DNA of 64,000 nt, from NCBI GenBank assembly GCA_025786725.1, contig JAHLTZ010000057.1, forward strand, positions 1 to 64,000, in the 5' to 3' direction. The translations under genes and the position numbers were made by a program. The stretch is from Syncephalis fuscata S228 (Eukaryota; Fungi; Zoopagomycota). Position 1 is the stretch's first letter. Each line of letters starts with the position of its first letter. Below, in pieces: positions 1 to 20,968 of this stretch. Below the pieces are notes generated by a model, which ran no database searches, was not told where the DNA came from, and worked only from the letters and a program-made list of their open reading frames with translations.

Positions 1-3000
1 TACTTAACTAATTACTTAACTTTTAATTAACTTTTAGTCTATATTTTATTAACAAAATAGCAAGGATACCCTTACATTTCTAGTCAAATATTACTTAACT
101 TTTACTTAACTTTAGTTAACTTTTAATTAACTTTTTTAGCCGTATATTTGGTCGATTTTTGTTGGATTTTTGTCGGATTTTTTTGGGAAAAACGGCCCAA
201 CTCCCCGTATTTTTAATTCCACGGATACTTGTCCTAAAAATACACGGTGCCACTTGTTCGAACCGCAAGAAGCAGGCGCGTCGATCCTGATATGCTAAAA
301 AATCGCCAAAAATCGTGGGAATGCGTGAAAAATACGCGGAGTTGGCCTCCATACAAAAACGGCACTTTTTGCATGTTTTGATTTTTAATTCATTGGATAA
401 ATTTTTGGCGATTTTTTCAATATATAGATCGACGCATCATATTATTGCGGTTCGAACGAGTGGTCCTGTGTATTTTTAGAGCAAGTATCCGTAGAATTAA
501 AAATACGGGAGTTTGATGACTAGTTTATAGTGGCATATTTCACGAAATCCTAAGATATCCCCCTATAACCAGCAAACTAGAACTTCGCGTATTTTTAACT
601 CTACGGATATTGCTCTAAAAATACACAGGACCACTCGTTCGGACCGCAATAATATGATGCGTCGATCTATATATTGAAAAAATCGCCAAAAATTTATCCA
701 ATGAATTAAAAATCAAAACATGCAAAAAGTGCCGTTTTTTGTATGGAGGCCCAACTCCGCGTATTTTTCACGCATTCCCACGATTTTTGGCGATTTTTTA
801 GCATATTAGGATCGACGCGCCTGCTTCTTGCGGTTCGAACAAGTGGCACCGTGTATTTTTAGGACAAGTATCCGTGGAATTAAAAATACGGGGAGTTGGG
901 CCGTTTTTCCCAAAAAATCCGACAAAAATCCAACAAAAATCGACCAAATATACGGCTAAAAAAGTTAACTAAAAGTTAACTAAAGTTAAGTAAAAAGTTA
1001 AGTAATATTTGACTAGAAATGTAAGGGTATCCCTTGCTATTTTGCAATAAAATATAGACTAAAAGTTAACTAAAAGTTAAGTAATTGGTTAGCTAATTAG
1101 TAATTAACTAATGGTAATGATAACCGTTTAACAACTTAGTTAACTTGTTAATTACTTAACTAATTACTTAACTTTTAATTAACTTTTAGTCTATATTTTA
1201 TTAACAAAATAGCAAGGGATACCCTTACATTTCTAGTCAAATATTACTTAACTTTTTACTTAACTTTAGTTAACTTTTAGTTAACTTTTTTAGCCGTATA
1301 TTTGGTCGATTTTTGTTGGATTTTTGTCGGATTTTTTTGGGAAAAACGGCCCAACTCCCCGTATTTTTAATTCCACGGATACTTGACCTAAAAATACACA
1401 GTGCCACTTGTTCGAACCGCAAGAAGCAGGCGCGTCGATCCTAATATGCTAAAAAATCGCCAAAAATCGTGGGAATGCGTGAAAAATACGCGGAGTTGGC
1501 CTCCATACAAAAAACGGCACTTTTTGCATGTTTTGATTTTTAATTCATTGGATAAATTTTTGGCGATTTTTTCAATATATAGATCGACGCATCATGTTAT
1601 TGCGGTCGAACGAGTGGTCCTGTGTATTTTTAGAGCAATTATCCGTAGAATTAAAAATACGCGAAGTTCTAGTTTGCTGGTTATAGGGGATATCTTAGGA
1701 TTTCGTGAAATATGCCACTATAAACTAGTCATCAAACTTCACGTATTTTTAACTCTACGGATACTTGCTCTAAAAATACACAGGACCACTCGTTCGACCG
1801 CAATAACATGATGCGTCGATCTATATATTCGAAAAAATCGCCAAAAATTTATCCAATGAATTAAAAATCAAAACATGCAAAAAGTGCCGTTTTTTGTATG
1901 GAGGCCCAACTCCGCGTATTTTTCACGCATTCCCACGATTTTTGGCGATTTTTTAGCATATCAGGATCGACGCGCCTGCTTCTTGCGGTTCGAACAAGTG
2001 GCACCGTGTATTTTTAGGTCAAGTATCCGTGGAATTAAAAATACGGGGAGTTGGGCCGTTTTTCCCAAAAAATCCGACAAAAATCCAACAAAAATCGACC
2101 AAATATACGGCTAAAAAAGTTAACTAAAAGTTAACTAAAGTTAAGTAAAAAGTTAAGTAATATTTGACTAGAAATGTAAGGGTATCCCTTGCTATTTTTG
2201 TTAATAAAATATAGACTAAAAGTTAATAAAAGTTAAGTAATTAGTTAAGTAATTAACAAGTTAACTAAGTTGTTAAACGGTTATCATTACCATTAGTTAA
2301 TTAACTAATTACTAACAATTACTTAACTTTTAGTTAACTTTTAGTCTATATTTTATGTCAAAATAGCAAGGGATACCCTTACATTTCTAGTCAATATTAC
2401 TTAACTTTTTACTTAACTTTAGTTAACTTTTAGTTAACTTTTTTAGCCGTATATTTGGTCGATTTTTGTTGGATTTTTGTCGGATTTTTTGGGAAAAACG
2501 GCCCAACTCCCCGTATTTTTAATTCCACGGATACTTGACCTAAAAATACACAGTGCCACTTGTTCGAACCGCAAGAAGCAGGCGCGTCGATCCTGATATG
2601 CTAAAAATCGCCAAAAATCGTGGGAATGCGTGAAAAATACGCGGAGTTGGCCTCCATACAAAAACGGCACTTTTTGCATGTTTTGATTTTTAATTCATTG
2701 GATAAATTTTTGGCGATTTTTTCAATATATAGATCGACGCATCATATTATTGCGGTCCGAACGAGTGGTCCTGTGTATTTTTAGAGCAAGTATCCGTAGA
2801 GTTAAAAATACGCGAGTTCTAGTTTGCTGGTTATAGGGGATATTCTTAGGATTCGTGAAATATGCCACTATAAACTAGTCATCAAACTTCACGTATTTTT
2901 AATTCTACGGATACTTGCTCTAAAAATACACAGGACCACTCGTTCGACCGCAATAATATGCGTCGACCTATATATTGAAAAAATCGCCAAAAATTTATCC

Positions 3001-4500
3001 AATGAATTAAAAATCAAAACATGCAAAAAGTGCCGTTTTTTGTATGGAGGTCCAACTCCGCGTATTTTTCACGCATTCCCACGATTTTTGGCGATTTTTT
3101 AGCATATCAGGATCGACGCGCCTGCTTCTTGCGGTTCGAACAAGTGGCACCGTGTATTTTTAGGACAAGTATCCGTGGAATTAAAAATACGGGGAGTTGG
3201 GCCGTTTTTCCCAAAAAATCCACAAAAATCCAACAAAAATCGACCAAATATACGGCTAAAAAAAAGTTAACTAAAGTTAAGTAAAAAGTTAAGTAATATT
3301 TGACTAAAATGTAAGGGTATCCTTGCTATTTTGTTAATAAATATAGACTAAAAGTTAACTAAAAGTTAAGTAATAGTTAATGATTATTAAGTAATTAACT
3401 AATGTATATAACGTTTAACCATTAGTTAATTAACTAACTAATTACTTAACTTTTAGTTAACTTTTAGTCTATATTTATTAACAAAATAGCAAGGGATACC
3501 CTTACATTTTAGTCAAATATTACTTAACTTTTTACTTAACTTTAGTTAACTTTTAGTTAACTTTTTTAGCCGTATATTTGGTCGATTTTTGTTGGATTTT
3601 TGTTGGATTTTTTTGGGAAAAACGGCCCAACTCCCCGTATTTTTAATTCCACGGATACTTGTCCTAAAAATACACGGTGCCACTTGTTCGAACCGCAAGA
3701 AGCAGGCGCGTCGATCCTGATATGCTAAAAAATCGCCAAAAATCGTGGGAATGCGTGAAAAATACGCGGAGTTGGACCTCCATACAAAAAACGGCACTTT
3801 TTGCATGTTTTGATTTTTAATTCATTGGATAAATTTTTGGCGATTTTTTCGAATATATAGATCGACGCACCATATTATTGCGGTCGAACGAGTGGTCCTG
3901 TGTATTTTTAGAGCAATTATCCGTAGAGTTAAAAATACGGGAGTTTGATGACTAGTTTATAGTGGCATATTTCACGAAATCCTAAATATCCCCTATAACC
4001 AGCAAACTAGAACTTCCGTATTTTTAACTCTACGGATACTTGCTCTAAAAATACACAGGACCACTCGTTCGGACCGCAATAATATGATGCGTCGATCTAT
4101 ATATTGAAAAAATCGCCAAAAATTTATCCAATGAATTAAAAATCAAAACATGCAAAAAGTGCCGTTTTTTGTATGGAGGTCCAACTCCGCGTATTTTTCA
4201 CGCATTCCCACGATTTTTGGCGATTTTTTAGCATATCAGGATCGACGCGCCTGCTTCTTGCGGTTCGAACAAGTGGCACTGTGTATTTTTAGGTCAAGTA
4301 TCCGTGGAATTAAAAATACGGGGAGTTGGGCCGTTTTTCCCAAAAAAATCCGACAAAAATCCAACAAAAATCGACCAAATATACGGCTAAAAAAGTTAAC
4401 TAAAAGTTAACTAAAGTTAAGTAAAAAGTTAAGTAATATTAACTAAAATGTAAGGGTATCCTTGCTTTTTGACAATAAAATATAACTAAAAGTTAACTAA
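1..4500. repeat. Alternating-orientation (palindromic) tandem array: 8 arms of ~500 bp, period ~1.15 kb, two spacer types
   Basis: The start motif tacttaactaattacttaacttttaattaac recurs at 1153. Arms 1-510, 1156-1663, 2320-2815 and 3440-3941 are reverse complements of 585-1085, 1741-2250, 2891-3375 and 4016-4500. The ORF track gives the same spurious peptide on both strands. Confidence 0.97.
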
Positions 4501-5150
4501 AAATTAATAAATATCTAAGTACTCTTTGCTATTTTGATAATAAAATAGACTAAAAATAGTTAAAAAGTTAATTAAAAGAATTAAAATTTATTTGAAAATG
4601 TAAAAGTGTCCCTTGTCATTTAATAATAGAATATAGACTAAAAAGTTAATTAAAATTGTGTTAATTAATAAATAATGCTTGGTGTTTGATACTTGTCATT
4701 TAGTTAATTAGTCAAAGCAATGGTTTTTTAATATTAGCTAATTAATTAGCCTAGTTAATCGATAGTAATAGCCAGCTAATATTAGTCAATCAACTGGTTA
4801 GTTAATGATTAGTTAATTGGTTTAGTTAAGTTAATAACAATTGTTGTTTAACAGTTAATCAATTAATTAATAATGATTGTTGTTTAATAATGACTGCTAT
4901 TTAATACCCGTCAATTAGTTTAACTAATAATGATCGTTGTCTAACACTAGTTAATTAACTGATGTAGTTAGTTAGTAGTAATAGCAACTGTATTGGCCAA
5001 TCAGCTAGTTAGTTAATTAATAATGATTACTGGTTAACAATTAATTATTATTTAAGCAGGGAACATTAATTTGTTTAATAATTAAGTAGTTAGTTGGTTA
5101 ATAATGCTGTGTCTAACAATTAGTCTACTGATTAATTGTCAATGATTACT
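4500..5150. repeat. Degenerate tail of the array, rich in tagttaatt/ttaact motifs
   Basis: 4520-4650 is a decayed copy of the arm end (ttgctatttt..ataaaatagactaaaa..aaaatgtaa..cccttg), followed by low-complexity AT-rich sequence. Confidence 0.7.
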
Positions 5151-6514
5151 ACACTCATTTGCTTATAATGGTTAATAATGGTGCTGTTAGATATTGCATA
5201 ATCATAGCAACTGTGTCAACTGCTAACATTGTGTGTACACTTGCATATTTATCAATAATTGTATATTGGTGTATACTATACTTAAAATTTAGGATATACA
5301 AACTACACAATTGTATAGTACTAACTGCTATGGCTGGACCAGAGTAGAACAATAAAGGCAAATAAATGTTTGATAAAATAATGATCTTTTATTTAATGTG
5401 ATAATTACTGTTGTATTTATAGCAATGCTGGATATAAAAGAGAAAAGTAAACCAATTAGTAAGTATTTGTAAAGTTGTGCTAAAAGTTGTAGAGTGCTTA
5501 TTGATGCCATAAGCATAACAAATATTAGTAAACCTGTTTACATGTGTAGTAGTTAGAGTTAGGTAATATTAATTGTGTATATTTGAGAGTATAATGATTT
5601 TTAAATATAATCATCATCATATAGTGGGTTGTATAGATGTATAAATAAAATTCAACAAATTTTTATTTTCTATTTTATTTTAATCTAACTATATAAGTGG
5701 CGGATACAACACACGATAATATTATGTATTGGTATGTGCTTGCAGCATGCTGCAGTACATAATTATTGTAATGTACTAGGTTATAAACTTGTTGTAATAC
5801 ATATCTGTTGTAATAACAAACAAACCAAATATTAAGTCTACTAATAGTAAACTAAAACCAATGCTATTAAACAAAGCTGATTATACATATATTTATACGA
5901 ATAAACATCATTTGTAATGTAAAAATATAGCAATATCGTATATATATTTAGATATAATCAGTTAGATTTTTAGGTTCAATGCACAGTAATATGGCACACA
6001 TTTATTTAATACATAATTGCCACGATTGTTTATTTTACACATATTCGGCTTACAGCACAATTATACAGCCGTTTAAAGCTGTCATAGCATATACGTCACA
6101 AAATATTTAGAAAAACATGGGAGTTTTTCAAGCCATTCTTTAGACATTTGCAACAGTACTCGCAATAGTTAGAATAAGTCTACAATAATTGTGTAAAATG
6201 TACTCAAAACATTGACATGATCAAACATTATGTCAACTCATTACTGGCACTTGCATAAGCTATAATCAAGCTTATCTGAAAGTTTTGAACAATTAATAGC
6301 TAATAACGCACCCACAAATAGATAAAATGTGTGTTTGACGCCATGGTGACATTGTTTTGTTTATAGTTAATGAATGGTATCAAATTTATTAATCTCGTTT
6401 GTTATCATTTGATGTTCAAATGATTAAATTTAGTCTCATTCAAGCAATTAAAATACATATTCATTTTATTGAATATGACGCTGTGTTAAATGGCATCGGC
6501 TATCAAAGTGTTCA

Positions 6515-7310
6515 TTTCGTATATTTATTATCCAGTATGCATATATGCTTTATTTAATTATATTATTTCCATTTTGTCCCACACTACTGTATATCATTCT
6601 ATGCCATAGTAGATACATTTTATTGATCATATACACCAACACACGTCACCCTACTCATTACACTATATGCTCTATAACCTCAGCACCGCCTATCACCCTC
6701 TTTCTGTCGTATGCTTATTCTACATCACCTTATACTTATCTAGTGCTTCTATATCCAAAACTGTTTTTATTTCTGTTCTAGCTTTACTATTCATAAAAAT
6801 CAATTAACGTTGCCCATCTGTTCATGCATCATCTCAATGAACAGAATAGAGCAAATGTTGTAAATAGCATAAATAGCAATAAGAAACAGCACTTTTGAAT
6901 AGCACATACTAATATACAATAAAGTGATACACAATAGAGTGAGTATACAAATAAAGTAGTACACACAATAGCTGGCATACATGTAATACGGCTAGTTGCA
7001 CGTCGATAACAACATAGTTTGTTGTCTGGCATTAGTATGGTATCAATCGTTAGCATGTTAATTTAATTTCTCAAATTACACAATGCGGACATTGCTGCTG
7101 TCAGCAATAGTCATGAAAATATACATTGTTTTAATTATGCAATGTGCAAGTTTTGGTTCATTGATTGATTGGTGTTATTAACAGCACCAATGCTGTAGAT
7201 ATAGCTGGTGTCATTGAGTATGCTGCGCGTGTGTACTAATCGTACAAAATATTACTGGCATGATTTGCTAAATGCAGTCCACAGCTGTGAATCCATATGC
7301 ACTTTCAGCT
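6515..7310 (+). mobile_element. Old, diverged relic of the 2.75-kb repeat family
   Basis: aataaagtagtacacacaatagctggcatac..cggctagttgca (~6950) aligns with ~52044. ttaacagcaccaatgctgtagatatagctgg (~7178) aligns with ~52268. tttattatccagtatgcatata (~6524) matches the family terminal module. Confidence 0.65.
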
Positions 7311-7514
7311 ACTTGATGCATCATGCCGTCAGTTAAATTGATATAGCAATTATCGCAGCACTATCATGAGTATTGGTATATTAATTAATCACATTTGATA
7401 TAGCTACGCACGTACTACCAATCCCAATAAAATGTCAGTGATTGATTTAGTTAATCATTTTTAGTATTACTAGTAGTAGTGATCTATACATTTATTAACA
7501 ATTGATTATAATTG

Positions 7515-8045
7515 GTGGCTCAAGTGACTAAAACTAATAACATTCGCGCAACCGAACTGGACATTCGTTCTATTTAACATAGGGCCGGGTGGTAATGAAT
7601 ATTAAATAAAAAATTGTTTAATTATAATTTGACTTGGGATCAAGTGGCTAGATCTAATAACAGTTGTCTTGTTGAACTAGATATCCGTTCTATTGAACAC
7701 AAACTAAGTGATAAATGGCATTAGTCATTAAAACACTTGTAGCATAGATTTATTATCCGGCATGCATATACCCAGTACACACATATCCTCTATCCATTTC
7801 TATCATTTATATTCTATCCACACTAATATATATCGTTCTATAATATACTAGACACACCTATTGTTTATATGTTTCAATGCACTTTGCTCAGTTTACTCAT
7901 TGCGCCATATGCACTACAACTTTAACGCCATTTTTATGATTTCTTACCATATATTTATATTTTATATATAAATCTATACTCACCTAGCCTTCCTCTATTC
8001 AAAGTTGTTTTTTGTTCTAGCTTTATTATTAATAAAAGCTGACTA
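7515..8045 (+). repeat. Dispersed repeat module (caagtgactaa..taataac..ttctattgaac..atagatttattatcc), head duplicated in tandem
   Basis: Two head copies at ~7520 and ~7640, then a body matching 51181-51430 and the reverse complement of 30960-31225. Confidence 0.7.
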
Positions 8046-10718
8046 GTGTCGATCATCGGCGCATGCATATATGCTCAATAGCTTCAACGCAGCTAATCGT
8101 CACCTCACACTATATATTCATTATGTTATATAAATTTGGTGTCAAATTACAGCTATCATTTGATACATGCTCTATTATAATAAATGTTTTTTGGTGGTAG
8201 TGACTTTATTATATTTAATTATTTTGCTATAGCTAATCACTATTTACTGATAACACATTCTATGATAATGAGTAGCTTTGTGTCAAATGGCATCAGTATT
8301 CTAATGCGCAAATATTGACAACATACAATCTACGTCATCGCACTTTTCTTTCTCTTTTTCACACTTGATAGCATATATCCATTGCATGCACCTCTACACT
8401 CCATATATGCTACCTTAATAGTGCCAGTAGTTGGCTGACTACTAGTTAAGTTTAACACCTTCTACACTATGTCTTTGCATTGCTCTTCTTTAATCTGAGC
8501 TTTTTTACAAAGCATCCTTTCACTCCAATCATTGGTATTGGCAGCCTATTTGACACGATAAGCGCATTTCCGGCTTGTTTCTATGCTATGTTGAATATAT
8601 GCTATATTTTGCTATAGATTACCACTACAGGTCAGCTGGCAACAGCTTTACCATTCAACAGTGGCAGTGTGATCTACTACTGTCGAGACGGTACAGGCTG
8701 CTGTCAGTATGATCTGCGGCGGCAATCTATAGCAACGCAGTGTATATAGTGATTCTGGCAGCATATAGCCAGTATAGTCGCCATGTATAGCTGCTGTATG
8801 TATACACCACCAATATTAGTATATTGAACTGCTAGTATAGTTGCTAAGTAAGTCTTTAGTGCCAGTGCGACAATGCAAGCTGCTACTGTCGCTATTACTG
8901 TATGTGCACAGCTGTCGGTACGATGACTGTGGTAACTATATGCGCTGTTACTTCTCTACCAAGTCCCTTCTCTGTTTTATTTTACTACCTGAACATTTCG
9001 CTCAACACTACTTCTTTCTAAACATCAGTGTTTTCAAATGCAACAACTACTGCAAGACCTAACACGCTAACTTTGTAGACTGTAGTATATTTGAGCAAAT
9101 GTTGCTACTTGATCATTGTCACCAACGGCTACAGACTCTGTAATCTATGAACAAACATTGGTGTATATGCTGTCGTTTGATCAACAGCGTCTTCCATAGC
9201 ATCCTGCTTAGTATGTAGTCAGTGGTGCTTGTGCAGTGCTGCTTTATTTACATTCTAATTATTGCATTAGTTGTCCTGAGCCGGTACTGTAACTGGTGTC
9301 AATGTTTATGACAGGTTGCCGTTTGACAGTCTCTGACTATGTCTTATCAGTCTACATCTGAAGCATTTACCGTTTCTTTGAAGTTACAGGTAAGTATTGT
9401 TATGTTTTATTAAACTATGCATTATTGTGCGGACAAAGACGGTATAGCACAAATAGCCATGTACGCTTTTATAATCGGCTGTTTATTATGGCAAGACAAC
9501 TGGCGCTGCTACATAATAAAATTTGCTTATTTTTACTTCAAACTACTTACCATTTAATCAACTGTTATTTTTACATAGATATTTAGGTATGCAGTGTTAG
9601 TGTTGCTGTTTGCATTCATGCACTGTGTTTTGTTTTCAAATAATACTAGCTTTTAAAAAGATCACAAGCCTTCTTCCTTGCCGTGTTATAATATGGAATA
9701 ATATATATTCAAATGAATGGTCAAATAAAGTGTAAAACACTAGTAATAAAGGTATAGTATGCGTATTGCACAAGCAATCAAGTAAAATATACAAACAATA
9801 CGGCGAGTAACAAATAAACAAGTTTTATCAATAAGACATGATGAGTAGAGTATAGTTTAAAATAGAATGAATAGATAAAATAATAGTGAAAATATACATA
9901 GACAATTAAGTAAGTACGATGAATTGAAACTATAGCAATAAAGCTAGCGGCAATAAAACGCCTGCTGTAAATAGGTTTGCTCATTATATGATCAATCAAT
10001 ATACAATATAATACTGAGTATTTCAATAACTAATGCCACTCGCCGCCCTGTCCCATTTTCATTGACATGAATGGGTAGTTTGATTGTGTGAGTACTATCA
10101 AATATGATAATTTGTCGCTTTAATCATACTGAATTTTTAATAAATAATTTAATTTTAGTACAATAAACTTAGCACAAATAAAACAACTAAATGTCAATGG
10201 TGTTATTAAAATGGTTAGTGTGGATGTAAGTATATTGGATATAACTAATTGTAACATGCTATATATAATATCATTCAGATAACTTAATGATGTACCGAAG
10301 CTACTGAATATTCTATTTTTATTACTTTTATAATAAAGTTATTTATTTAAAGTGTGCTAAAAGGTAAAGCATTTATAAAAAGTGGTATTATTTACCAATA
10401 CTTATAATCAAGGTAGGTCTGCTACCACGATGAAATCAACATTGCGGTATAAATTTTATCCTAAATGGTCGGCGTCCATATAGATACACATTCAGCGATA
10501 CATAAAAGCAACAGCAATACTGATGCCCATTACCAAGTGTAAATACAACAGCTGCTACTTGTCATACTTGTAAAACTATCGATAGCATTCAACTGGTATG
10601 GATGATGTTTAATTTCAATATACGTCAGCAAGATGCGCACATTAGATTCAGTGTTAATAAGCAATATATTTAAGCAATATATAGTGTATAGCCTTTAAAG
10701 TGTATGTTAGTATGTACT

Positions 10719-11205
10719 TAATACATTTTTGATTAGTATTTATGTGTGTGTTTATTACTAAAATGGCAAAGGAAATTATTGTGGACTTTTTTAATTAACC
10801 AAGCAATGTTTGCCGATGTTTAATTTTATTAATAATGTAGCTAGAACTACGCAATGCCATTTATCATAACCGCATAGTTTTGACGCATAGACACATATAT
10901 ATTATGTATTTTTATGAGATTATGGAAAGTGCTAACAACTAAAAGGTACTTAAAGTACCATTTTATAATAATATTGTTGCTTCTATTTATAGCACCTTTT
11001 CATTATTTTTAAAAAAATACATAACTTATATGTGTCTATGCGTCAAAACCATGCAATCATAATGAATAGCATTACGTATTTCTAACTACATTACTGATGG
11101 AATTAAAAATCGGTGAAAATCACTTGATTAATCAAAAAAGCACATAGTTTTTCTTTACCATTTGGTAATAAACACACACACACACATACTAATAAAAATG
11201 TATTA
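10719..11205. mobile_element. Foldback/MITE-like element, ~220-bp imperfect inverted arms with a short spacer
   Basis: gttttgacgcatagacacatata (~10878) pairs with tatatgtgtctatgcgtcaaaac (~11027). taatacattttt (10719) pairs with aaaaatgtatta (ends 11205). No ORF. Confidence 0.75.
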
Positions 11206-20485: not shown

Positions 20486-20968
20486 TAAATAGGCAATAGT
20501 GTAAATGGTAGTCATATAATAAAGAGTTTGTTTATTTTAAAAAGTAATAGTCTTGATGATATGCTATAGCAGGTTGTTACCTAAATGATACAATAAAGCA
20601 TGGTTAGCACTAGTATTCGTTAATAGCAATAGTAATAAGCATATATCAATGTGCATATATCAATATATGTATAGAGTTCCTCAGAGATCTTGGTGATAAT
20701 ATCGATCGTCATTAATTGCTTCCGAAGTAGCGAATAGTTTATAATCATTGGAACCATATACATATATAGTACATATAGATACAAGATTGACCCAATATAA
20801 TACTCACCTTGTATGTTTACTAAACAATGGATCTATGAAATGTATTAAAAGAAAGAAAAAGCATAAAGAAAATAAATAGCAATTTACATTGGTGCACCAT
20901 TTATATCGATTATGGCACAGGGGATATTTTGAACAGGGGTAGACGTAATTCTCTTGTCTTTTATTACT

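What the first reader, a model, noticed from the sequence alone, without database searches (positions are those of the whole stretch)
1..4500. Head-to-head/tail-to-tail concatemer with flip/flop spacers at both junction types
Seen: eight ~500-bp arms alternate in orientation. Spacer A (~70 bp, gtttgatgactagtttatagtggcat..ccagcaaactagaac) reads forward at ~511 and ~3942 but as its reverse complement at ~1666 and ~2816. Spacer B (aatggtaatgataaccgtttaacaacttagttaacttg) is forward at ~1110, reversed at ~2255 and blurred at ~3390. Known: alternating concatemers with flip/flop imperfect hairpin ends are the signature of hairpin-ended linear replicons (poxvirus, parvovirus) and of recombination between long inverted repeats. 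Inference: this may be a palindromic satellite acting as a non-canonical chromosome end or centromere core, or an integrated concatemer of a ~0.57-kb hairpin-capped DNA. No TTAGGG array or coding capacity was seen. Amplification chimeras or unphased assembly could produce a similar picture.
Basis: partly seen in the sequence, partly recalled or inferred. Interest (0 to 1): 0.85.

Follow-up and report, generated by a model that had tools for sequence, protein, structure and literature searches.

The report
Palindromic satellite array in a fungus
The first 4.5 kb of this fungal contig is a genuine satellite whose ~500-bp units alternate in orientation, with two short spacers that lie either way round; it recurs at eight chromosomal sites, is also seen in soil DNA, and looks like a recombination-driven chromosomal repeat, not an integrated hairpin replicon or an assembly error.

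Summary
Window 1-4507 holds eight ~500-bp arms in strictly alternating orientation (93-100% alike). They are separated by spacer A (+,-,-,+) and spacer B (+,-,blurred).

The genome is a 29-Mb Zoopagomycota-type fungus; earlier scan notes call it Syncephalis fuscata. First readers had already noted the same array on other pieces of this genome.

The array sits at eight distinct loci. All are at or near contig ends, and all meet a paralogous flank (75-92% alike) through the B end of an arm.

Over 51 spacers the orientations look random and independent (A pairs 10 same:10 opposite; B 8:11; A-B 21:26).

Contigs from two unrelated soil metagenomes cross both junction types, so the palindromes are not artefacts of the source sample's amplification or assembly.

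Against a hairpin replicon or telomere substitute:
- the B-side tail of each arm is built from repeat modules of the chromosomal flank;
- there is no coding capacity, no telomere resolvase and no viral match;
- TERT is present;
- two arrays are internal.

Best reading: a chromosomal palindromic satellite, probably subtelomeric but possibly pericentromeric. It likely arose by fold-back duplication, and recombination between its arms homogenises it and inverts its spacers.

Caveat: spacer orientation rests on the long-read assembly alone. The "blurred" spacers are fwd/rev mosaics, which points to mixed reads.

The parts
11..507 (-). arm 1 (runs to the contig start; bases 1-10 are the B-side tip)
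   Evidence: 97.4% to the reference arm
511..585 (+). spacer A, forward (head-to-head turn-around; itself a decayed palindrome, 63% self-reverse identity)
586..1085 (+). arm 2 (reference arm). Contains an imperfect palindrome 588-890 (74-79%), an inner hairpin 748-902 with 21-nt ends 95% complementary, and a B-side tail of TTAACT-type repeats at 960-1085.
1086..1152 (+). spacer B, forward (tail-to-tail turn-around)
   Evidence: crossed by soil-metagenome contigs X5 record 18 and X6 record 21
1163..1663 (-). arm 3
   Evidence: 97.8%
1664..1737 (-). spacer A, reversed
   Evidence: 98.7% on the minus strand
1742..2241 (+). arm 4
   Evidence: 97.8%
2252..2316 (-). spacer B, reversed
   Evidence: 97.0% on the minus strand
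2318..2814 (-). arm 5
   Evidence: 98.0%
2815..2887 (-). spacer A, reversed
   Evidence: 96.0%
2892..3374 (+). arm 6
   Evidence: 95.0%
3375..3440 (.). spacer B, 'blurred' short form: a mosaic of the forward and reverse forms (0.79 vs 0.70)
3441..3939 (-). arm 7
   Evidence: 97.4%
3943..4015 (+). spacer A, forward
   Evidence: 97.3%; the arm-to-spacer-A stretch 3731-4016 is covered by soil-metagenome contig X5 record 20
4017..4507 (+). arm 8, the innermost arm; it meets the flank through its B end, as on every other contig
   Evidence: edge arms are the most divergent
4508..4676 (+). tandem, decaying ~85-bp modules homologous only to the B-side tail of the arm
   Evidence: D5, D7; 74-75% matches to unit positions 14-143 only; the border 4465-4607 is matched with 0 mismatches by X6 record 23
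5174..5652 (+). ~480-bp flank element shared by all array flanks at ~83% identity, in fixed orientation relative to the array

Best explanation
This is a chromosomal palindromic satellite of a Zoopagomycota fungus.

Structure (shown). The repeat is a ~1.15-kb palindrome made of two ~500-bp arms in opposite orientation. The arms are joined head-to-head by a ~75-bp asymmetric spacer A and tail-to-tail by a ~67-bp asymmetric spacer B. Arrays of at least 3-11 arms lie at eight paralogous loci. Each array is attached by the B end of an arm to a shared, older flank. Spacer orientations are random and mutually independent.

Origin (inferred). The unit arose in place by repeated fold-back (hairpin-primed) inverted duplication of flank-derived sequence. 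This would explain the palindromes nested within palindromes and the arm tail built from flank modules. The unit then spread between loci by ectopic recombination or break-induced replication.

Dynamics (inferred). Exchange between adjacent inverted arms inverts the spacer between them, producing flip/flop as in other inverted-repeat systems. Exchange between same-orientation arms changes unit number. Gene conversion keeps all arms about 98% alike in substitutions.

Location (inferred, about even odds). The arrays are probably subtelomeric, with the true telomerase-made telomeres unassembled beyond them.
For: - Structure and coordinates.
- Genome-wide census: the unit occurs only on ten contigs, at or near their ends.
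- Eight distinct flanks are colinear, have the same polarity to the array, and are 75-92% identical over 0.5-2.8 kb.
- Every array meets its flank at the B end of an arm.
- Relics in the flanks match only the B-side tail of the arm.
- Nested imperfect palindromes and a thrice-repeated motif lie inside each arm.
- Orientation statistics over 51 spacers: neighbouring A pairs 10 same: 10 opposite, B pairs 8: 11, adjacent A-B pairs 21: 26.
- Arm variants are mosaic. Mismatch at the informative columns is 0.16-0.17 within a contig and 0.21 between contigs, and the edge arms are the most divergent.
- Both junction types, and the array/flank border, are present in contigs of two unrelated soil metagenomes.
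- Summed word depth in the source-sample runs is hundreds to thousands over the array against about 8 on the flank.
- A TERT domain is present, and no telomere repeat of any tested type was found anywhere in the assembly. This fits chromosome ends hidden behind repeats that did not assemble.
Against: - No contig links an array to a telomere, so the subtelomeric placement is only an inference.
- C320 carries an eight-arm array with mirrored flanks on both sides. C201 has a flank-like segment between two arrays. Both fit internal, for example pericentromeric, arrays or end-to-end fusions as well as a false join.
- Spacer orientation is attested only by a noisy long-read assembly. A palindromic array lets reads align in either direction, so some of the orientation calls may come from the assembly and not from the DNA.
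- In soil metagenome X6 the array contigs (depth 2.6-4.7) are hardly deeper than the flank contigs (depth 2). The high copy number suggested by X1/X2 may therefore reflect library bias; the library type of X1-X4 is not on record.
Confidence: 0.6

Rival explanations
1. The arrays are a centromeric or pericentromeric satellite. They would be internal, flanked on both sides by mirrored paralogous flanks, and colonised by a dedicated retroelement.
For: - C320 shows flank, then an eight-arm array, then a mirrored flank leading into the 726-kb contig C24.
- Array 1 of C201 is also bounded on both sides by flank-type DNA.
- The only three full copies of a DIRS-like retrotransposon in the genome sit in or beside these arrays. 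I recall that DIRS-1 marks the centromeres of Dictyostelium.
- Eight flanks would pair into four arrays.
Against: - C102 carries at least 11 arms from the same flank without reaching any second flank, whereas C320 has 8. C320 may therefore be a false join through a palindromic repeat.
- Seven of the eight flanks end in the array at a contig end.
- The DIRS copies all follow the motif AGTTAAT, which is abundant in this AT-rich sequence, so target preference alone can explain their location.
- To my knowledge, satellite-based centromeres are not known in fungi.
Confidence: 0.2
2. The arrays are integrated, or still partly free, concatemers of a small hairpin-capped (dumbbell) DNA that replicates by a rolling-hairpin mechanism. 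Flip/flop spacers would then be the replicated hairpin loops.
For: - Alternating arms with two turn-around sequences, each found in both orientations at about 50:50 and independently of one another, are what rolling-hairpin replication predicts.
- Depth over the array in runs X1/X2 is very high.
Against: - The arm tail is homologous to chromosomal flank modules.
- There are eight paralogous chromosomal sites of fixed polarity.
- Arms carry mosaic substitutions and the edge arms are divergent, as in a resident satellite.
- There is no coding capacity, no ResT/TelK resolvase in the genome and no match in viral contigs.
- Soil metagenome X6 shows no excess of array over flank.
Confidence: 0.07
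3. The arrays are an artefact. Either the palindromes come from amplification chimeras or missed-adapter reads, or the palindromes are real but the mixed spacer orientations are produced by mis-oriented reads in assembly and polishing.
For: - The assembly is long-read and noisy, with homopolymer indels.
- One locus was assembled four times (C24, C102, C173, C320R).
- Blurred spacers are position-wise mosaics of the two orientations.
- Earlier notes report many contig-end palindromes in this genome.
Against: - Independent soil-metagenome contigs cross arm-A and arm-B-arm junctions and the array/flank border.
- The turn-around points are the same two sequences at all 51 junctions, unlike random chimeras.
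- Arms differ by shared substitutions.
- Most spacers are clean (94-100% to one orientation).
- Adjacent A and B orientations are uncorrelated (21:26), whereas whole-read mis-orientation of a uniform array would flip them together.
- C24 and C102 agree on the first six spacers out from the flank.
Confidence: 0.13

Closest known systems
Subtelomeric satellite or telomere-associated repeats shared between chromosome ends
   Same: It is a multi-locus repeat at contig ends with fixed polarity. Older paralogous flanks lie proximal to it, and the distal repeat is homogenised.
   Different: The units alternate in orientation instead of lying head-to-tail. No link to a telomere tract has been assembled.
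Large palindromes formed by fold-back priming or breakage-fusion-bridge cycles at eroded chromosome ends (for example palindrome-type survivors of telomere loss in budding yeast; fold-back inverted duplications, PMC3907307; inverted repeats in resected DNA, PMC10164571)
   Same: Inverted duplications turn around at short imperfect palindromes and leave an asymmetric spacer. The setting is near chromosome ends.
   Different: Here the unit is small (0.5 kb), reiterated many times, fixed in the species (it is seen in soil DNA) and present at eight loci. Telomerase is present.
Flip/flop inversion between inverted repeats (2-micron plasmid, plastid inverted repeat, herpesvirus segments, human Y-chromosome palindromes with polymorphic spacer inversions)
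   Same: A short unique segment between long, near-identical inverted arms is found in both orientations. The arms are kept alike by gene conversion.
   Different: Here there are dozens of invertible spacers in series within one array. No site-specific recombinase is evident, and isomerisation in living cells has not been shown.
Rolling-hairpin or hairpin-telomere replicons (parvovirus, poxvirus concatemer junctions, hairpin-ended fungal plasmids)
   Same: The head-to-head/tail-to-tail concatemer geometry is the same, with flip and flop forms at both junction types.
   Different: The sequence has a chromosomal origin, and it has no genes, no resolvase and no viral relatives. See the membership test.
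Satellites with inversely oriented subunits (I recall these from tenebrionid beetles such as Tribolium madens) and foldback transposons
   Same: Repeat units are built from inverted subrepeats and form strong hairpins.
   Different: In those satellites the composite unit is repeated head-to-tail, without spacer inversion. Foldback elements are dispersed with target-site duplications, whereas these arrays sit in paralogous flanks.

Membership tests
Hairpin-ended linear replicon / rolling-hairpin concatemer | Alternating head-to-head and tail-to-tail units with flip and flop forms of both turn-arounds | tested here: met
Hairpin-ended linear replicon / rolling-hairpin concatemer | A replication initiator or telomere resolvase, encoded by the element or by the host | tested here: not met
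   No credible ORF in the unit. PF16684 ResT/TelK is absent from the genome. Rep/NS1 was not searched.
Hairpin-ended linear replicon / rolling-hairpin concatemer | Sequence independent of the chromosomal insertion site | tested here: not met
   The arm tail is homologous to flank modules, and the flanks are paralogous with fixed polarity.
Hairpin-ended linear replicon / rolling-hairpin concatemer | Free unit-length molecules with covalently closed ends | not testable with these tools
   Only Logan contigs were available, and they cannot show molecule ends.
Subtelomeric repeat | Lies between unique DNA and the telomere tract | tested here: inconclusive
   Arrays run off contig ends. No telomere-type repeat was found in the assembly. 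TERT is present.
Subtelomeric repeat | Shared by several chromosome ends in the same polarity, with paralogous proximal flanks | tested here: met
   Eight distinct flanks.
Centromeric satellite | Internal, one per chromosome, flanked by chromosome arms on both sides | tested here: inconclusive
   Only C320 shows two long flanks, and it conflicts with C102 from the same flank.
Centromeric satellite | Bound by centromeric histone or kinetochore | not testable with these tools
   No ChIP or Hi-C data were available.
Foldback transposon | Dispersed insertions with target-site duplications, and sometimes a transposase | tested here: not met
   All copies lie in the same paralogous context and none lie elsewhere. 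No coding capacity.
Amplification or assembly chimera | Junctions absent from independent, differently prepared DNA | tested here: not met
   Soil metagenomes X5 and X6 hold both junction types and the flank border.

The most novel reading that the evidence does not exclude
The array is a functional chromosome-end or centromere device. On this reading, a reiterated palindrome can fold back to cap or regenerate an eroded end, acting as a natural, fixed counterpart of the palindrome-type survivors seen after telomere loss. Alternatively it serves as the first satellite-type, palindromic centromere of a fungus. In either case its spacers would actively flip between molecules in living cells.
Probability: 0.12. 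Interest if true: 0.85.

Novelty: new variant of a known kind. Interest (0 to 1): 0.5.

Why it matters
To my knowledge, long near-perfect inverted repeats with short spacers are among the most fragile sequences known in model eukaryotes. Here a fungus keeps dozens of 500-bp inverted arms, separated by only ~70 bp, at eight loci, and the same structure turns up in wild soil DNA.

That makes it a natural system for three questions: how palindromes are tolerated, how they spread and are homogenised, and whether serial inverted repeats isomerise in vivo.

There is also a practical point. The array breaks the assembly at eight places and has produced redundant, and possibly chimeric, contigs (C102, C173, C320). 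Anyone using this genome should know that.

Tried and rejected
- Telomere motif searches all failed to find a terminal array: TTAGGG x4; TTAGG with 0-2 nt gaps (covers the insect, nematode and plant types); TAGGG with 1-6 nt gaps; TTGTGG x3; TTGGG with 0-4 nt gaps. The best results were 4-5 unit runs inside C306 and C112. Twenty-three further contig ends show no telomere-like repeat.
- Rfam: the only hit was a sub-threshold miRNA-hairpin match at spacer A, which simply reflects the hairpin.
- The recurrent 78-86-aa ORF in each arm translates to a sequence that does not look like a protein. I did not pursue it.
- The metagenome-contig scan with the arm core gave 11 hits, all chance 21-mers with no array homology.
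- The viral-contig scan with spacer A gave no hit.
- Mre11 is present, so loss of the main hairpin-opening nuclease does not explain the palindrome richness. Sae2/CtIP was not tested.
- Looking for extra similarity between neighbouring arms (across A, across B, or i+2) as a signature of fold-back or unequal crossing-over gave no signal.
- Literature searches found no description of this array or of telomeres or centromeres in Zoopagomycota.
Full report
**1. The observation**

- Eight arms of ~500 bp at 11-4507 alternate -,+,-,+,-,+,-,+ and are 95-100% identical to the reference arm.
- Spacer A (75 bp) is forward at 511 and 3943 and reversed at 1664 and 2815.
- Spacer B (67 bp) is forward at 1086 and reversed at 2252. 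The copy at 3375-3440 is ambiguous (0.79 forward, 0.70 reverse).
- One 1152-nt unit folds as an almost perfect hairpin.
- There is no credible ORF, no tRNA and no Rfam family above threshold.
- The window is bases 1-64000 of contig C325, so the array runs off the assembly.

**2. The organism**

A SNORD24 snoRNA and intron-split genes show a eukaryote. A UBR1-type ORF in the window has its best relative in Thamnocephalis sphaerospora (Zoopagomycota), at only 45% identity. Earlier notes of this scan call the genome Syncephalis fuscata, a mycoparasite; I could not verify the name. The assembly is 29.4 Mb in 371 contigs and carries homopolymer indel noise typical of long reads.

**3. Genome-wide census**

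The 1.15-kb unit occurs only on ten contigs, always at or near an end: C325, C102, C34, C344, C24, C173, C320, C311, C201 and C334. Comparing flanks reduces these to eight distinct loci.
- C24, C102, C173 and the right side of C320 are 98.5-99.7% identical over 3.5 kb.
- C102, C173 and C320 stop at the very same base. They are therefore redundant assemblies of one locus.
- All eight flanks are colinear and lie in the same orientation relative to the array. They are 75-92% identical over 0.5-2.8 kb, including a ~480-bp element at ~83% (window 5174-5652).
- Every array meets its flank through the B end of an arm.
- The 'relics' next to each array match only the B-side tail of the arm (unit positions ~1-146 and 960-1119). 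In the window they are three tandem, decaying ~85-bp modules at 4459-4664 (D7).

So the arm tail is made of flank sequence. The flank is not a decayed palindromic array.

**4. Anatomy of the arm**

The motif ACTCCSCGTATTTTT occurs three times per arm: 20 times within 1-4326, where 0.2 are expected in the whole window. It marks the ends of overlapping imperfect palindromes.
- In the reference arm, 588-890 is a palindrome at 74-79%.
- An inner 155-bp hairpin at 748-902 has 21-nt ends that are 95% complementary.
- The spacers are themselves decayed palindromes, with 63-66% identity to their own reverse complement.

The hierarchy runs from old, diverged inner palindromes to young, near-perfect outer ones. 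That is what repeated fold-back duplication would leave. This last step is inference.

**5. Spacer orientation**

I oriented 29 A and 22 B spacers on all contigs.
- A is + 12 times and - 17 times. B is + 12 times and - 10 times.
- Neighbouring A spacers are 10 same : 10 opposite. Neighbouring B spacers are 8 : 11. Adjacent A-B pairs are 21 : 26.

Orientation is thus random and independent from spacer to spacer. A head-to-tail amplified 1.15-kb unit would give 'same'. A pure fold-back history would give 'opposite'. Whole-read mis-orientation of a uniform array would flip A and B together. None of these patterns is seen. Short runs with one register (for example C24 A-,B+ three times) suggest some unit-wise expansion.

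**6. Blurred spacers**

Spacers fall into two classes.
- Clean ones are 76-80 nt and about 0.94 identical to one orientation.
- Short ones are 61-72 nt and match both orientations.

Aligned, the short ones are position-wise mosaics of the forward and reverse forms, while the arms beside them stay at 96-97%. They are concentrated in the four redundant contigs of one locus. The simplest reading is a consensus made from reads of both orientations. That means either real heterogeneity among molecules at one position or multi-mapped reads from other copies. I cannot tell which.

**7. Independent reads**

Four small runs of one 2017 sample (X1-X4, library type not on record) and two soil metagenomes of other studies (X5 from 2025, X6 from 2023) hold words of the stretch. 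Laying X1, X2, X5 and X6 on window 1-6000 gave the following.
- X5 record 20 (294 nt) covers 3731-4016, from an arm through the whole of spacer A.
- X5 record 18 (251 nt) covers 1064-1326, arm-B-arm.
- X6 record 21 covers 1115-1279.
- X6 record 23 matches the array/flank border 4465-4607 without a mismatch.
- The loose end of X5 record 17 reproduces the sequence at the far end of contig C344.

The palindromic junctions therefore exist in environmental DNA and are not products of the source sample's amplification or assembly. In X1/X2 the summed word depth is 500-10,900 over most of the array against 7-9 on the flank, and 6.5% of all X1 records lie on the array. The tool warns that this is not a copy number, and in X6 array and flank contigs have similar depth. 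I take 'far more copies than the ~70 arms assembled' as likely but unproven. Short contigs cannot report spacer orientation, because the two arms beside a spacer are nearly identical.

**8. Chromosome end, centromere or replicon?**

No telomere-type repeat of any tested form is present in the assembly, nor at 23 other contig ends. Yet a telomerase RBD is encoded on C328. Telomeres therefore probably exist but were not assembled. The array is unlikely to replace them.

Two arrays have flank-type DNA on both sides.
- C320 has eight arms between mirrored flanks, with the right flank leading into the 726-kb C24.
- C201 has six arms, then a retrotransposon, then ~450 bp of reversed flank-like sequence, then another arm.

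This fits internal (pericentromeric) arrays or end-to-end fusions, but also a false join, since a palindromic array overlaps its own reverse complement. C102 carries at least 11 arms from the same flank where C320 has 8, so at least one of them is not the whole truth.

Against a foreign hairpin replicon: the arm tail is built from flank-derived sequence, the sites are paralogous, the arms carry mosaic substitutions and the edge arms are divergent, there is no resolvase, no coding capacity, and no viral match.

**9. Conclusion**

The best-supported reading is a resident palindromic satellite, kept uniform and reshuffled by recombination among its own arms (confidence 0.6). Within that reading, I put a subtelomeric location at about even odds. 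The rivals are a centromeric satellite (0.2), orientation calls that come from the assembly and not from the DNA (0.13), and a hairpin replicon (0.07).

Compared with known systems:
- It behaves like inverted-repeat flip/flop systems and like fold-back palindromes at broken ends.
- It resembles subtelomeric repeats in distribution.
- It fails two defining tests for a rolling-hairpin replicon.

I class it as a new variant of a known kind. First readers noted the same array on other pieces of this genome (s1-650186, s1-649990). Native long reads anchored in the flanks would settle both open points.

Noticed in passing
L034 (C34) 2484-6910; also C201:365588-370096 and C344:44465-48969: A 4.4-kb DIRS-like retrotransposon carrying RT, RNase H, a Dam-type methyltransferase and a tyrosine recombinase, with ~130-bp split direct repeats. 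Its only three full copies in the genome are 100% identical to one another, apart from an 80-bp indel in one copy. All three are inserted right after the motif AGTTAAT, in or beside this array. It looks recently active.
   Followed up: partly
contigs C102, C173, C320 (right part) versus C24:4460-15900: One array flank was assembled four times at 98.5-99.7% identity. Three of these contigs end at the same base. They differ in arm number and in spacer orientation. They are redundant contigs, and C320 may be chimeric.
   Followed up: partly
whole assembly G000: No canonical or common variant telomere repeat was found anywhere, although a TERT RNA-binding domain is encoded at C328:679971-680530(-). 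The telomere motif of this fungus is unknown to me. Earlier first-reader notes mention a telomere beside a 5.8-kb tandem unit and a 22-bp repeat elsewhere, which I could not read.
   Followed up: partly
window 20677-20753 (-): A SNORD24-type C/D box snoRNA scoring 55 bits (gathering threshold 41).
   Followed up: no
C24/C320R flank, about 1.35-1.87 kb and 2.27-2.79 kb from the array: A pair of ~520-bp inverted repeats (96-97% identical) lies inside the flank. Related copies at 68-74% identity are at window 6529-6822 and 7683-8132. This is a separate dispersed foldback-type repeat family.
   Followed up: no
runs X5 and X6 (soil metagenomes): Near-identical pieces of this fungus's array and flank occur in two unrelated soil metagenomes, so the species or a very close relative is present in those soils.
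   Followed up: no
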